NCBI RefSeq assembly: GCF_001194135.2 | Contig: NC_068985.1 | Coordinates: 127,050,683 to 127,114,682, forward strand | Source: Octopus bimaculoides | Lineage: Eukaryota | Reading direction: 5' to 3' | DNA length: 64,000 nt | Part shown: positions 12,387-50,400 of the stretch, piece by piece | Layout: each line of letters starts with the position of its first letter | Numbering within the stretch: the first letter of the stretch is position 1 | Made by a program: the position numbers and the translations under genes | The notes under the pieces: model-generated | The model's database searches: none | Seen by the model: the letters and a program-made list of their open reading frames with translations, nothing else | What the model was told of the DNA's origin: nothing

Positions 12387-12538
12387 CTGAAACTCCTTTA
12401 TCATCATCTCGGCCACCTCTGTATGACCATTACGAATGGCATCCATCAACGGGGTCGTTCCACATGCATCTCTTACATCAACTGGATGACAGCAGTCAGA
12501 CAGCAACCATTGTGTGACTTCTTGACAACCATGAAGTG
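12387..12538 (-). CDS. ANKRD16: ANKRD16 coding exon 4 (absent from the ORF track)
   Basis: ttctctgttctag|CA acceptor, CAG|gtgaga donor, 152 nt, phases 1/0. Encodes (A)LHGCQEVTQWLLSDCCHPVDVRDACGTTPLMDAIRNGHTEVAEMMIKEFQ versus recalled human [51 protein letters not shown]. Confidence 0.92.
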
Positions 12539-13027
12539 CTAGAACAGAGAATAAATGTTGTTGGTGCTGGTAGTAGGTGCTGACAACACCTTAGCTAAAT
12601 ATATATATATATATATATATATANNNNNNNNNNNNNNNNNNNNNNNNNNNNNNNNNNNNNNNNNNNNNNNNNNNNNNNNNNNNNNNNTATAGTTAGCTAT
12701 ATACATATACATATTTACCAGAAGTAACAGAGTGACTCAAAGTCCAAGAGTTTCGTGTGTTGGCACTAATGCATGAAACTCTTGGGCTTTAAGTCACTCT
12801 GTTATTTCTGCTGAATATTAATAAAAATATACATATACTCATATTTTGAGTCCTATTTTTCTTGTTTGCAGCAACATACCTATATACACGGACAGAGGTC
12901 ACTGCCATTTACCATTACCAACACGCTCACTACTACTACTACAACCAACAAAAGATGCCCCCACGTGGACTATTGACACCAGTAAGGAACAATTTTGAAC
13001 TTTTCATTTAATTTCATTTAATTTCAT

Positions 13028-13190
13028 TGAAAGAAAAATGACAACGCTATTCAAGAGAAGATTTGCGTTTTCAAACTCGGAACTTAGAAAACTGATAAGG
13101 AGGATACAGGAGGCGGTCGAAAAAGCCAGCTTCTATATATGGCTGAAGCGGGAAGACCGAATATGGCTTGAAAGTCATAACATGTCTAGG
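13028..13190 (+). mobile_element. C-terminus of an RLE-type non-LTR retrotransposon (HERO-like)
   Basis: RKLIRRIQEAVEKASFYIWLKREDRIW-stop resembles recalled HERO-clade ends (..AE..S.WLW.KR.D..W). Confidence 0.5.
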
Positions 13191-14779
13191 TGAAACAGGC
13201 TGACACTGAAGTGGCTTTGTGCCCTCCATTGTCAGTTAAAGTTCAGACAGTGTCATGTGACAACTTGCTGGAGCTACTTGCTGGAGCCTAGCAGNNNNNN
13301 NNNNNNNNNNNNNNNNNNNNNNNNNNNNNNNNNNNNNNNNNNNNNNNNNNNNNNNNNNNNNNNNNNNNNNNNNNNNNNNNNNNNNNNNNNNNNNNNNNNN
13401 NNNNNNNNNNNNNNNNNNNNNNNNNNNNNNNNNNNNNNNNNNNNNNNNNNNNNNNNNNNNNNNNNNNNNNNNNNNNNNNNNNNNNNNNNNNNNNNNNNNN
13501 NNNNNNNNNNNNNNNNNNNNNNNNNNNNNNNNNNNNNNNNNNNNNNNNNNNNNNNNNNNNNNNNNNNNNNNNNNNNNNNNNNNNNNNNNNNNNNNNNNNN
13601 NNNNNNNNNNNNNNNNNNNNNNNNNNNNNNNNNNNNNNNNNCTAACTGGATCCTAATCCACCAAGGGAAGGTATGTCAGAAGAAAGTAATTCAACAACGC
13701 GGGTTGATGAACCGTAAGACGTGTGGCCAGAACCTCCTGGAAAATAACCATAGCGAGGGACATTCCACAGTTGAATCAGAACAGTCACAAACAGTGAAAG
13801 AAGACATGCACCCAACACCAGAGCTGAAGACACCTCCGAAAGGGGGTGGCCCCGCCACGTCAAAACGGTAGAGGAGTAGGGGCCGAAACCGGACGTGGTT
13901 CCTCCTGATGATGTCTTCAGCTAACTGGATCCTATAAAGGAGCTGTTGTGGTAGCAGACCACGAAACATGGTTGAAATTCCTTTTTGATAAGGTTCGTTT
14001 TTACAAGAACGGAAACATGTAAAAAATATCTCTGACAAAATTTTAAATTAAAATTCATTTTTGATATATTGGCGTTTTCAAACTTCTTTTTTATAAATAT
14101 ATACCCACTCGTATGCCACCTACACTTTTTTATCAATATATATATATATATATATATATATATATATATACATACATGTGTATTTATATATATAGTTATT
14201 TATACACACATACATACATATATACTATATATATAAACATATATGTATGTATATGTTATATGTAGACATATATGTGTGTATGTATGCATACACACACACA
14301 TGTACACACACACACAAACACACAGACACACACATACATGCATATATAGAAAGAGAGATAAAGAGATGGGATGGAAGAGAAGAATCAATGTGCATGGCCG
14401 AGTGGTTAGGGTGTTGCACTCATGATCACAGTACATTGTGTTCTTGAGCAAAAAGACTTCATTTCATGTTACTCTACAATGATTTTGACATCTTAGACAA
14501 GTGATAAATATCAATGTTTTGTCATGTTTGTGACTTGTCAATACCACATACACAAAACAAGTGCTAAAGCAAGCTAAATCGCTGTCTATGATTATATGCA
14601 AAATGGTGTAAGAACCATCTGCTGCTATGTCCCAAAGTTTCATGTTATGGAAAAAAATTCAGATATGAATTAAAAGCAGCTTTGAGGGATACAATATTGA
14701 ACACACATACATAAATTCATGAAGTAACTGTACTTCCTTGTCAATAGAGGATGTGCACTTAAGTAAGGTATTTCATTAC

Positions 14780-47500: not shown

Positions 47501-48268
47501 AAAAATTGTCTAGATATTCTAGTAACACTATAAAAGTATCTTTAACCTAGCAAATAAAAAAACGGAAAATTTGTAGTCTATATTCTTTCTCTAAGAATAC
47601 CATACAATACTACACCTACTTTCATAAATGACAATAACAATTAAAGACATAATTGCAGCTATCAAGAAAACAACATGAACTGAATAATAGTAAATTATAA
47701 CTGGTCTTGAAATTACTGCTGGCTACATAAATCAGTGGACACTAATGTCACATTCAATACAATTGAAAGACATCAAGCCAAATTTGTTAGCAATATATAT
47801 AGAAGGCACAGGATCATTCATTAAAGGTCAACATGGCTTTAGCCAAAGTTGTTTCATTGCCAATGCAAAGAGAGACACTGAACTAGTGCAATCAGTAATT
47901 ATCTCCACTTCTAATTGGTGCAAGCCAGCTAGCCGAAGTATATCCTCAACCTAAACAAGCTGTAATAGTCCATAATGATTACACAACTTTCCTTCTCCTC
48001 CAAATCTCACGGAGTAGCTTTGAACAGTTCTTATAGAAATTTTATAGGATTTCACTTCAGCCTGATGCTCAGTTAGATCTTGTTCTTATTACTTCTTTCA
48101 CATCTCTTGGGCAAGGCTCCTCCAAGCTGAATACCACTCTTGATTCTGGTGAGGTTATGAGTGCTTTGCATAAGCCCAGAGTTGGCTCTCTCTCACTATC
48201 ACTCTAAACACTTGTGAGGTATTCATTATTGGCATCTTTGGAACAGGTCACCTGACTAGTCTGCTTCT

Positions 48269-48837
48269 TTATTTACATTATTTACATTTGACGGATATTT
48301 GTCCTCATCTTGTTTGTTGTTAAAACGTTTTGGCTGATATACCCTCCATTCTCATTCCTAAGGTATTTTTCAATGTTATTATTATTCAGGTCACTGCCTG
48401 GAATTGAACTCAGAATCTTGGGGTTATTAACCGCTATGCCATATGCCCGTGGGCAATTATGGAGTGAATTTTAGGGCTTATAAATCTAATATTCTCCTAT
48501 CCTTCTTGAATACCGGTTCCCATATGCTATTCATATCTGCACTTGGTCTGCTTAGGAGGTTGTTGTGTTCTAAAATATGTGCGTAGTGGTTAAGAGCGCG
48601 GGCTACTAACCCCAAGATTCCGAGTTCAATTCCAGGCAGTGGCCTGAATAATAGTAATAATAATAATAACAACATCAAAAAATACCTTAGGAATGAGAAC
48701 CCAGGTTCGAAATTTCCCCAAGACACCTGATGAAGGCTGGAGAGTATATCAGCTGAAACAGTGTGTTAACAACAAACAAGATAAGGACAAATATCTGTAA
48801 AATGTAAATAATTCCTCATCTCTTAAACATAGAACTG
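48269..48837 (-). mobile_element. 5'-truncated Penelope-like insertion with an inverted terminal repeat and 12-bp TSD
   Basis: Minus-strand ORF end ILEHNNLLSRPSADMNSIWEPVFK-stop. 48269-48440 is an inverted, internally deleted copy of 48580-48810. TAGTCTGCTTCT at 48257-48268 and 48838-48849. Confidence 0.75.
48722..48767 (+). ncRNA. Minimal type I hammerhead ribozyme-like motif (partly degenerate)
   Basis: gacac-CTGATGA-aggctgg agagtata tcagct-GAAAC-agt-gtgtt. Stem I gacac/gtgtt, intact core boxes, stem II gctg/cagc. Cleavage triplet appears mutated in this copy. Confidence 0.6.
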
Positions 48838-50041
48838 TAGTCTGCTTCTGACTGAGAAGCTGCTTTGTCAATTTGTAGAGGTTAGCCAAGAATGCAGCTC
48901 ACTTACTTGCTTTCTCTCTTCATCTCCTATGGCTTCTCTGTTCTTGTCAATACCAGAAGCTCCTTCCTGAGGATTGCCCCAAAATTTGCTGGGTCAATTT
49001 TTTCAATCACCTCTGCTTCCGTGTATTGCTTACATCTGATTTAAGTTTGTTCTTAGGATGCAAGATTTTCATTACCCTGCGGTTAGCACAAAAAAAAAAA
49101 ACAGATGGTATGGGCCAGGCTTCCTTGGTCTCAAAACACTCAGTATCAAAGTTCACAATAATGGATGTCACAGTTTTTAACTGGTGGATGGTCCACATCT
49201 CCCTCAGCAGTTACTGCCAAAATCCAGCCAACGCTTATGTCAGACTCCTGCCACTCAGATGTCTTTGATGAATGGGACCCACTGGATCCTTGGCTGGGCT
49301 AGCTGAGTGTAGCCAACCAAAGGGTCATCCAGTAGACCAATGCTAGCAACTGTAGGTGACATACGGAGGCTCTAGGCTCAGTGGTTTATATCCAGGCCAT
49401 GCTTCTCCTGCATCTCACAAGATACCTCTGTGTACTATGTCATCCCTTCAGCTGACACACACCTTACACTGGTGTGATGAATCCTAAAGACCCTCATATT
49501 CTCGCAGGCCTTAATGCAGATGCACTGAACTTCCATTGCTCTATTTTCCTTTATTGTTGTTCTTCCATCTTGTGGAGGGGTGGTGCATAATAATAAGCAC
49601 CGCCGCATGGTGTACTGAGCTAGACAGAAAAAAAAATCAATATATATCCATTTTCCCGAAAGTTATGACGGAAAAATGGGATCTTGTGAATTTTACGAAA
49701 GTCCTCTCTCCACCCCACAGGTTCGTTTACGCAAGTTTTTTTTTGTCCTATTCGTTTTCTACACAGCTGTTAACACCCGGCAGGGTGCTTTTTTTTTTTT
49801 TTTTTTTTTTTGTTAACGAGTGAAGATCGTTATATTAACCGACAGAAATTGTAAAAGTTACTTGACGTTCTAAGACCTGTGGAATAAGAATACAATAATT
49901 TCGCCACAACTATAGTTTAATGCTCACTCCCATCCAGTTTGTGTATGTGTGAGAGAGAGAGAGAGAGAGAGAAAGAGAGAGAGAGTGTGTGTGTGTGTGA
50001 TGCATAATTAAGAAGTTATGAGAAACTGGCTCCTTACTCAC

Positions 50042-50400
50042 CAGTCTCCTTTTTTCATACTGTCCACGTTAAGAGATAAGCTGAGCAAGAACTGTAGACA
50101 TTCTATTTGGTTAGCTTGAGAAGCTTCGTGTAACGGTGTTTTACGATCATTATTGATGGATTCGAACACAATTTTAGTGTTTAAGGTCCATTCCAGATGG
50201 CGATTGAGAAGTTCTTGGCTAATAAACTTTAGAATATTTAGACGCCCGAAACGAGCAATTAAATGAATAATGTTGTCCCCTGCTTTATTACATTTCTTGA
50301 TCAACCAAGCTTCCTGAAAACTATCAATATAGTCAATAAAATATTGTAAATTTCCCTTCTGAGCTGCTTGTATAAGGTGTTCAAAGTAAAAGTTACTCAT
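50042..50400 (-). CDS. ANKRD16: Ankyrin repeat domain-containing protein 16 orthologue, coding exon 1
   Basis: ATG at 50400; encodes MSNFYFEHLIQAAQKGNLQY...GDNIIHLIARFG...RKTPLHEASQANQIECLQFLLSLSLNVDSMKKGD(W). Ends TG|GTGAGT (phase 2). Matches recalled human ANKRD16 (GDTLLHCAARHG; YKRPLHEAAS; VDCLKKADW). Confidence 0.9.

What the first reader, a model, noticed from the sequence alone, without database searches (positions are those of the whole stretch)
12387..50400. Invertebrate ANKRD16 keeps all three putative serine-acceptor lysines
From memory, mouse ANKRD16 binds alanyl-tRNA synthetase and captures mis-activated serine on K102, K135 and K165, protecting neurons, and was described as vertebrate-specific. 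The spliced protein here aligns without gaps over this stretch at an offset of 15 and has Lys at all three sites: K117 (MKKGDW), K150 (VNKDGW) and K180 (IWKVSS). Intron positions also appear shared. This suggests that this trans-acting AlaRS proofreading system is older than vertebrates and present in a large-brained mollusc.
Basis: partly seen in the sequence, partly recalled or inferred. Interest (0 to 1): 0.72.

Follow-up and report, generated by a model that had tools for sequence, protein, structure and literature searches.

The report
Octopus ANKRD16 gene, first four exons
This stretch holds the first four coding exons of the octopus counterpart of ANKRD16, the mouse helper of alanyl-tRNA synthetase proofreading. 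The gene is much older than vertebrates, but only one of the three 'acceptor' lysines is conserved by descent, so the three-lysine match is mostly coincidence.

Summary
On the minus strand, four canonical GT-AG exons (50400-50042, 18795-18673, 14877-14780, 12538-12387) splice into a 244-aa ankyrin-repeat protein. It aligns to mouse ANKRD16 without gaps at offset 15, placing K117, K150 and K180 opposite mouse K102, K135 and K165. All six assembly gaps lie in introns, and exon sizes match those of other invertebrate orthologues, so nothing coding is hidden.

Orthology is strong. All four introns match brachiopod, snail, bivalve, scorpion and octocoral genes in position and phase, and three of four match mammal and fish. 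ANKRD16 is therefore an ancient eumetazoan gene, although reviews still call it "vertebrate-specific". This is not new to databases: NCBI already names many invertebrate proteins "ANKRD16-like".

The functional inference is weak. Only the K135 site is invariant (135/135 sequences).
- The K102 site is Arg in most invertebrates.
- The K165 site is Lys essentially only in placental mammals. It is Gln in marsupials, Asp in birds and Asn/Asp in invertebrates.

Octopus K117 and K180 are therefore lineage-specific, not "kept". AlaRS binding and serine capture remain untested. The window is Octopus bimaculoides, and its public protein model for this gene is chimeric. It lacks exon 1 and contains transposon-derived segments.

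The parts
50042..50400 (-). Coding exon 1 of ANKRD16 (aa 1-119 plus the first two bases of the W120 codon). Start ATG at 50400-50398; donor GT at 50041-50040. Contains K116 (50055-50053) and K117 (50052-50050, opposite mouse K102).
   Evidence: The phase-2 intron inside the Trp codon is shared by all eight species mapped.
18796..50041 (-). Intron 1 (~31 kb, length approximate). Contains assembly gaps 20535-20616, 25042-25912 and 29768-29828, plus retroelement and transposon debris.
   Evidence: No ankyrin-like open frame lies inside it.
18673..18795 (-). Coding exon 2 (123 nt, aa 120-161 partial). Contains the family-invariant NKDGW motif with K150 (18707-18705, opposite mouse K135).
   Evidence: Same 123-nt size as in five other invertebrates. 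K150 is invariant in 49/49 and in all 135 other family sequences counted.
14878..18672 (-). Intron 2 (phase 2, at octopus residue 161), with gap 17406-17531. Present in all invertebrates mapped including the octocoral; absent from mammal and fish.
14780..14877 (-). Coding exon 3 (98 nt). Contains K180 (14822-14820, opposite mouse K165) and K184.
12539..14779 (-). Intron 3 (phase 1, at residue 194, shared by all species mapped), with gaps 12624-12687 and 13295-13641. The nearer gap ends 86 nt from the exon-4 acceptor.
12387..12538 (-). Coding exon 4 (152 nt, to aa 244, ...MMIKEFQ), followed by donor gtgaga. The phase-0 intron here is shared by all species mapped.
1..12386 (-). Start of intron 4. 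The remaining ~110 codons (three more exons by homology) lie beyond the window edge. Includes two transposon-derived segments (4598-4446 and 430-257) that the public protein model wrongly uses as exons.

Best explanation
The window carries the 5' two thirds (four coding exons, 244 aa) of the Octopus bimaculoides orthologue of ANKRD16, a ~360-aa protein made almost entirely of ankyrin repeats.

Shown: the gene is intact here, is spliced at canonical sites, and belongs to a single-copy-looking family. That family's intron-exon structure and loop motifs (DWTPLM, NKDGW, RTPLHTAA-HG, CG-TP-MDA) are conserved from octocorals to mammals. ANKRD16 is therefore an ancient eumetazoan gene, not a vertebrate invention.

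Inferred by homology to mouse, at roughly 45%: the ankyrin solenoid docks on the catalytic domain of cytoplasmic AlaRS. A lysine on an inter-repeat loop attacks misactivated seryl-adenylate, so the serine ends up on ANKRD16 instead of tRNA-Ala. If so, the conserved candidate acceptor is K150 (mouse K135), perhaps with the nearly invariant neighbour K116 (mouse K101).

K117 and K180 sit at positions that vary freely across the family. In octopus they are lineage-specific Lys substitutions, where the likely ancestral states were Arg and Asn/Asp. The exact three-lysine match to mouse is coincidence, or at most convergence, and is not retention.
For: - Gene model and frame.
- Species: 100% identity to O. 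bimaculoides A0A0L8HEE0 over exons 2-4.
- Similarity: the best full-length matches are proteins named ANKRD16, at 42-50% identity over 83-100% of the query, from fish, birds and mammals as well as molluscs, arthropods, a brachiopod, a hemichordate and octocorals.
- Introns: positions and phases are identical, 4/4 with five invertebrates and 3/4 with mammal and fish. The octocoral carries the union of all seven introns.
- Tree: the family including octopus separates from other ankyrin hits in 89/100 neighbour-joining bootstraps.
- Profile: a vertebrate-only HMM scores the 244-aa fragment at 268 bits in one stretch. The best single stretch against any solved ankyrin protein is 68 bits.
- Conserved columns: 23 invariant columns in 49 family members, including N149-K150-D151 and W153.
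- Lysine statistics.
- Structure: the AlphaFold2 model has mean pLDDT 94.7, and the three lysines fall in the inter-repeat loops 108-121, 141-154 and 175-188.
- Background: Lys is not the generic ankyrin residue at the repeat position of K117 and K150 (7 of 69 outgroup repeats), so the invariance of K150 reflects family-specific constraint.
Against: - No expression, splicing or protein evidence was available for octopus.
- The C-terminal third is outside the window.
- The function is known only from mouse. The mouse acceptor sites are recalled, not read, because the paper is not held.
- There is no solved ANKRD16 structure or AlaRS complex on which to map an interface.
- If serine capture needs all three lysines, most vertebrates (54 of 90) and nearly all invertebrates would lack it. 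That result would argue the activity is a placental novelty.
- The proteome-wide reverse best-hit test against octopus could not be run.
- The homology search uses a word prefilter, so its ranking is not exhaustive.
Confidence: 0.85

Rival explanations
1. True ANKRD16 orthologue, but the ancestral and octopus function is something other than AlaRS serine capture, for example a general ankyrin scaffold. On this view the proofreading role arose within vertebrates or placentals.
For: - The K165 site is Lys only in placentals (37/40) and is Gln/Asp/Asn elsewhere.
- The K102 site is Arg in 27/41 non-vertebrates, and Arg cannot accept an aminoacyl group.
- Only 36/90 vertebrates have all three lysines.
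- Function has been shown only in mouse.
Against: - K135 and K101 are invariant or nearly so across about 135 sequences spanning cnidarians to mammals.
- The loop motifs that carry these lysines are the most conserved parts of the protein. This suggests one ancient, conserved binding or reactive surface.
- AlaRS and its serine misactivation problem are universal.
Confidence: 0.45
2. Cephalopods converged adaptively on the placental three-lysine configuration, for example to protect large, long-lived neurons from mistranslation.
For: Octopus is the only one of ~46 non-vertebrate sequences with Lys at all three sites. Both variable-site lysines lie on the same loop face as K150 in the model.
Against: - It rests on a single species. 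No other cephalopod sequence was in the searched collection.
- The expected number of chance triple-Lys lineages in the sample is about 0.15-0.5 (from frequencies).
- Both changes are single-nucleotide steps from Arg and Asn codons.
- There are no expression data.
Confidence: 0.07
3. Not ANKRD16 but another ankyrin-repeat family that resembles it through generic repeat similarity.
For: Whole-sequence scores against giant ankyrins are high (350 bits to ankyrin-1/2), which shows how repeat proteins inflate similarity scores.
Against: - That score is the sum of eight overlapping placements of at most 68 bits each. ANKRD16 orthologues instead align end to end at 42-50% identity.
- Intron positions and phases are identical.
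- Family-specific invariant motifs are present.
- Tree support is 89/100.
Confidence: 0.02
4. Pseudogene or assembly artefact: exons brought together across unread gaps do not form a real transcript.
For: - Six gaps lie inside the gene span and intron 1 is ~31 kb.
- The public model misses exon 1 and picks up transposon fragments.
Against: - All four exons are open, with canonical splice sites and conserved sizes and phases.
- There are no frameshifts or stops.
- Family-invariant residues are all retained.
- The gaps are intronic.
Confidence: 0.03

Closest known systems
Mouse/human ANKRD16 (ankyrin repeat domain-containing protein 16; AlaRS co-factor, Vo et al. 2018 Nature 557:510)
   Same: - End-to-end homology of ~45% identity, ungapped over 157 residues.
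- Same repeat architecture.
- Three of four intron positions and phases.
- Lys at the positions of mouse K101, K102, K135 and K165.
- Same invariant loop motifs.
   Different: - Octopus has an 11-12-residue insertion in repeat 2 (about aa 66-77, with lower model confidence).
- It has an extra intron at residue 161 and lacks the vertebrate intron at 208.
- The lysines at the K102 and K165 sites are independent acquisitions.
- The function is untested.
Invertebrate 'ANKRD16-like' proteins already in NCBI/UniProt (Lingula anatina, Physella acuta, Solemya velum, Centruroides sculpturatus, Daphnia magna, Ptychodera flava, Dendronephthya gigantea and others)
   Same: Identical four-intron layout, with exon sizes 123 and 98 nt in all five and 152 nt as in Solemya (149-152 nt otherwise). 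40-50% identity (55-57% for the partial Haliotis proteins). Same invariant K150 and K116.
   Different: Most have Arg at the K117 site and Asn/Asp at the K180 site. Octopus alone in this sample has Lys at both.
Generic ankyrin-repeat proteins (ankyrin-1/2, DARPins, TRPA1 ankyrin domains)
   Same: Same 33-residue helix-loop-helix repeat fold. Pfam Ank, Ank_2 and Ank_4 matches.
   Different: Only ~30% identity per placement, with each stretch scoring 68 bits or less. They lack the Trp-containing loop motifs DWTPLM and NKDGW. They group separately in the tree.

Membership tests
ANKRD16 | Best full-length sequence matches are ANKRD16 proteins, with collinear end-to-end alignment | tested here: met
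   - the named top hits are ANKRD16 or ANKRD16-like, at 42-50% identity over 83-100% coverage.
- ungapped alignment to mouse.
- 268 bits against a vertebrate-only profile.
- The reverse search against a complete octopus proteome was not possible.
ANKRD16 | Groups with ANKRD16 and not with other ankyrin families in a tree | tested here: met
   the family split has 89/100 neighbour-joining bootstraps, after removing four borderline sequences (63/100 with them included). This is a distance method only, because no likelihood software was available.
ANKRD16 | Shared gene structure (intron positions and phases) | tested here: met
   introns at residues 120 (phase 2), 194 (phase 1) and 244 (phase 0) are shared with mammal, fish and five invertebrates. 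The intron at 161 (phase 2) is shared with all five invertebrates, including an octocoral.
ANKRD16 | Family-specific invariant motifs in the inter-repeat loops (DWTPLM, NKDGW, RTPLHTAA-HG, CG-TP-MDA) | tested here: met
   octopus carries all 23 columns that are invariant in 49 family members.
ANKRD16 | Full-length architecture of about 360 aa, ankyrin repeats throughout | tested here: inconclusive
   The window encodes 244 aa, modelled as seven helix pairs. The C-terminal ~110 aa is seen only in the public model P0001, which comes from outside the window.
ANKRD16 | Lys at the three mouse serine-acceptor sites (K102, K135, K165) | tested here: met
   This is not a family-defining feature, however. 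Only 36/90 vertebrates and none of the other non-vertebrates have all three. Only K135 is invariant.
ANKRD16 | Direct binding to the AlaRS catalytic domain and capture of misactivated serine | not testable with these tools
   No complex prediction or assay was available, and the PDB holds no ANKRD16 structure.

The most novel reading that the evidence does not exclude
ANKRD16-mediated capture of AlaRS-misactivated serine is an ancestral eumetazoan quality-control mechanism rather than a vertebrate one. Its core would be the invariant loop lysine (mouse K135, octopus K150), and the extra acceptor lysines would be gained independently in placentals and in octopus.
Probability: 0.35. Interest if true: 0.6.

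Novelty: new member of a known kind. Interest (0 to 1): 0.33.

Why it matters
Reviews of tRNA synthetase fidelity still describe ANKRD16 as vertebrate-specific. The gene structure here shows the family predates the cnidarian-bilaterian split. The question of when this third layer of AlaRS proofreading arose can therefore be tested in invertebrate systems.

The conservation pattern also redirects attention. K135 (with K101) is the only acceptor candidate under family-wide constraint, whereas K165 is a placental novelty.

In practical terms, the public O. bimaculoides protein for this gene is mis-modelled and would mislead orthology pipelines. The point is modest, because automated annotation already labels many invertebrate proteins ANKRD16-like.

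Tried and rejected
- Primary paper: I tried to read Vo et al. 2018 by PMC id and by DOI, but it is not held. A search for K102/K135/K165 together with ANKRD16 found nothing. The acceptor-site numbering therefore rests on memory plus the mouse sequence.
- Remaining exons: I looked for them in 1-12386 and found none.
- Other cephalopods: the only cephalopod protein in the searched collection is the O. bimaculoides model itself, so cephalopod-wide conservation of K117 and K180 could not be tested.
- Literature on invertebrate ANKRD16: nothing relevant was found.
- Bit scores as an orthology test: rejected as misleading for repeat proteins, since ankyrin-1/2 reaches 350 bits by summed placements. 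I relied on introns, motifs and the tree instead.
- First tree: the run had numerical overflow and four borderline sequences, giving 63/100. It was redone.
- 'Lys is simply the ankyrin consensus residue at the repeat position of K117 and K150': rejected, because only 7 of 69 outgroup repeats have Lys at that position.
- Intronic open frames: Pfam gave only weak reverse-transcriptase, integrase and DUF4371 hints.
- RNA genes: no tRNA or Rfam match in the window.
- Not run: the library-wide representative search and the third homology search. Ankyrin repeats would saturate them, and the answer would not change the verdict.
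Full report
**What is in the sequence.** Reading the flanks gives four exons:
- E1 50400-50042
- E2 18795-18673
- E3 14877-14780
- E4 12538-12387

Each internal exon is preceded by a pyrimidine tract and AG. The four exons are followed by GT donors (gtgagt, gtttgt, gtaatg, gtgaga). Joined, they give a 732-nt open frame of 244 aa with K117 (MKKGDW), K150 (VNKDGW) and K180 (IWKVSS). The ATG at 50400 is the first in its frame after a stop. No further ankyrin-like exon lies in 1-12386, so about 110 C-terminal codons are beyond the window edge.

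**Assembly gaps.** All six N runs inside the finding lie in introns 1, 2 and 3 (against the exon coordinates). The nearest one ends 86 nt from the exon-4 acceptor. The repeat register continues across each junction (GDW|TPLM, AVR|EGK, HTA|ALHG). Exons 2 and 3 are 123 and 98 nt, exactly as in five other invertebrate orthologues, and exon 4 is 152 nt, as in Solemya (149-152 nt in the others). The mouse alignment has no gap at any junction. Nothing coding is therefore hidden in a gap. Only the intron lengths are uncertain.

**Identity of the window.** The best database match is UniProt A0A0L8HEE0 of Octopus bimaculoides, 100% identical over exons 2-4. That public model is wrong in two ways.
- It starts at the Met inside exon 2, so it lacks exon 1 and K117.
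- Between ...MMIKEFQ and ADINQHD... it carries 109 residues taken from window 4598-4446 and 430-257.

Those residues have no counterpart in Lingula ANKRD16: 113 residues of the model, 118-230, lie between the two aligned blocks, opposite 3 in Lingula. The first piece overlaps an integrase-core-like fragment (weak Pfam rve match, E = 7e-4). The second has a reverse-transcriptase-like sequence by eye.

**Residue correspondence.** Mouse ANKRD16 (EDL08033.1, whose first 283 residues are canonical) has Lys at 102, 135 and 165. The local alignment to octopus is ungapped over mouse 71-227 at offset 15, which pairs these with K117, K150 and K180. The primary paper was not available.

**Orthology.** The top named hits of the 244-aa query are all ANKRD16 or ANKRD16-like, at 42-50% identity over 83-100% of the query. 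They come from teleosts, birds and mammals, and also gastropods, a bivalve, a scorpion, Daphnia, a collembolan, thrips, sciarid flies, horseshoe crabs, Lingula, an annelid, a hemichordate and two octocorals.

I fetched seven genomic loci and mapped each protein exactly onto its DNA.
- The octopus introns at residues 120 (phase 2), 161 (phase 2), 194 (phase 1) and 244 (phase 0) coincide in alignment column and phase with those of Lingula, Physella, Solemya, Centruroides and Dendronephthya.
- Vole and catfish share three of them. They lack the one at 161 and have one at 208 (phase 2).
- The octocoral also has the intron at 208, so it carries all seven.

The simplest history is an eight-exon gene in the cnidarian-bilaterian ancestor, with one intron lost in vertebrates and another lost in protostomes.

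Other tests agree.
- A neighbour-joining tree separates the family, octopus included, from the other ankyrin hits in 89/100 bootstraps, and vertebrates in 100/100.
- A profile built from vertebrate sequences alone scores the octopus fragment at 268 bits.
- Whole-sequence scores are unreliable for repeat proteins. Ankyrin-1/2 reaches 350 bits against the octopus query, but as eight overlapping placements of at most 68 bits each. I therefore weight the introns and the 23 family-invariant columns most heavily.

**The lysines.** In 90 vertebrate sequences:

| Mouse site | Conservation in vertebrates |
|---|---|
| K135 | Lys in 90/90 |
| K101 | Lys in 90/90 |
| K102 | Lys in 79/90 (otherwise Arg, Gln or Asn) |
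| K165 | Lys in 37/40 placentals; Gln in 5/5 marsupials and the platypus; Asp in 22/22 birds; Asp/Asn in 12/13 non-avian reptiles; Lys in 1/7 teleosts |

Only 36/90 vertebrates have all three lysines, and 33 of those are placentals.

In 45 non-vertebrate family members:
- the K135 site is Lys in 45/45;
- the K101 site is Lys in 40/41;
- the K102 site is Arg in 27, Lys in 6 and other residues in 8;
- the K165 site is Asn in 17, Asp in 11 and Lys in 1.

Octopus is the only non-vertebrate in the sample with Lys at all three sites. From these frequencies, the chance per lineage is about 0.003-0.01, so about 0.15-0.5 such lineages are expected among ~46. The likely ancestral states are Arg and Asn/Asp, each one nucleotide away from the AAA codons seen here. 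So octopus has the three lysines but did not keep them.

The one site conserved by descent is K150. Its invariance is not a generic ankyrin property, because only 7 of 69 repeats in the outgroup proteins have Lys at that repeat position.

**Structure.** AlphaFold2 on the family alignment gives a confident solenoid (mean pLDDT 94.7, pTM 0.90). K117, K150 and K180 fall in the non-helical inter-repeat loops 108-121, 141-154 and 175-188. K117 and K150 occupy the same repeat position in successive repeats, and K180 sits four residues earlier in the next repeat. No coordinates were returned, so distances were not measured. The PDB holds no ANKRD16 entry or AlaRS complex.

**How it most likely works.** Shown: this is an intact orthologue of a deeply conserved gene, whose most constrained parts are the loop motifs carrying K116 and K150. 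Inferred from mouse: the protein binds the AlaRS catalytic domain, and a loop lysine takes misactivated serine. I put this at about 45% for octopus. The main rival, also about 45%, is that the orthologue has another ancestral role and serine capture arose later. An adaptive convergence reading for K117 and K180 gets about 7%.

**Novelty.** Reviews still call ANKRD16 vertebrate-specific, and I found no paper on invertebrate orthologues. NCBI and UniProt, however, already label many invertebrate proteins ANKRD16(-like). None of the 120 hits is from Drosophila or Caenorhabditis, which may explain the label. That explanation is an inference, and the search's word prefilter is not exhaustive. This is a new, mis-annotated member of a known family. 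It comes with a useful correction about the family's age and about which lysine is conserved.

**Surroundings.** The rest of the window is transposon-rich intron and intergenic DNA. I recognised no second gene there; this was not searched systematically. There is no tRNA or Rfam match.

Noticed in passing
window 4446-4598 (-) and 257-430 (-): The public O. bimaculoides protein A0A0L8HEE0 uses these two segments as exons of this gene and omits exon 1. They have no counterpart in any homologue. The first segment overlaps an integrase-core-like fragment (weak Pfam rve match), and the second looks like a LINE reverse-transcriptase piece. The database model is chimeric.
   Followed up: yes
loci L001-L007 compared with window exons: Intron history of ANKRD16: the octocoral has all seven introns, vertebrates lack the one at octopus residue 161, and the protostomes including octopus lack the one at residue 208. 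The scorpion has an extra intron at residue ~58.
   Followed up: yes
L009 6001-7014 (JGI metagenome 3300022536) and L010 2067-3197 (Tara Oceans scaffold): There are intronless, full-length ANKRD16-like genes on compact eukaryotic metagenome contigs. Each lies about 1 kb or less from a Tim10/DDP zinc-finger gene. The source organisms are unknown. This could mean retrogenes, or a compact-genome animal or protist that carries the family.
   Followed up: partly
window 50205-50170 approx. (octopus aa 66-77, NRHLEWTLNTKI): There is an octopus-specific insertion of about 11-12 residues in the second repeat relative to all 48 aligned homologues. It coincides with the only dip in model confidence (pLDDT ~80), and accounts for most of the +15 numbering offset.
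   Followed up: partly
window 50140-50142, 50050-50055, 18705-18707, 14820-14822, 14808-14810: Every conserved or candidate lysine (K87, K116, K117, K150, K180, K184) is encoded by AAA. In cephalopods, A-to-I RNA editing commonly recodes Lys to Arg, Glu or Gly, so the genomic lysines may not all be lysines in neural mRNA. This was not testable here.
   Followed up: no
window 20654-21274 (+), 24333-25040 (-), 52604-52843 (+), 63225-63563 (+): Reverse-transcriptase or LINE-like open frames lie in intron 1 and upstream of the gene. There is a weak Pfam RVT_1 hit at 20798-21271; the others were recognised only by eye. One of them abuts the 871-nt gap.
   Followed up: partly
window 34119-36020 (+): A run of open frames in intron 1 looks like one decayed retroelement. 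The last frame (35673-36017) has a YIGCT...R...H pattern reminiscent of a GIY-YIG endonuclease, as in Penelope-like elements. Pfam gave no match.
   Followed up: partly
window 47241-47471 (+) and 23175-23450 (+): There are short DNA-transposon remnants in intron 1. One is a mariner-like transposase tail (by eye; no Pfam hit). The other is a weak DUF4371 (hAT-associated) match.
   Followed up: partly
alignment A3 (vertebrate ANKRD16), mouse position 169: The repeat-equivalent of K102 and K135 in the next repeat (mouse 169, octopus K184) is Lys in most vertebrates outside birds (where only 2/22 have it) and in 63% of the wider family. It is Asn in mouse. If acceptor lysines are positional, this site deserves testing in non-murine species.
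   Followed up: partly
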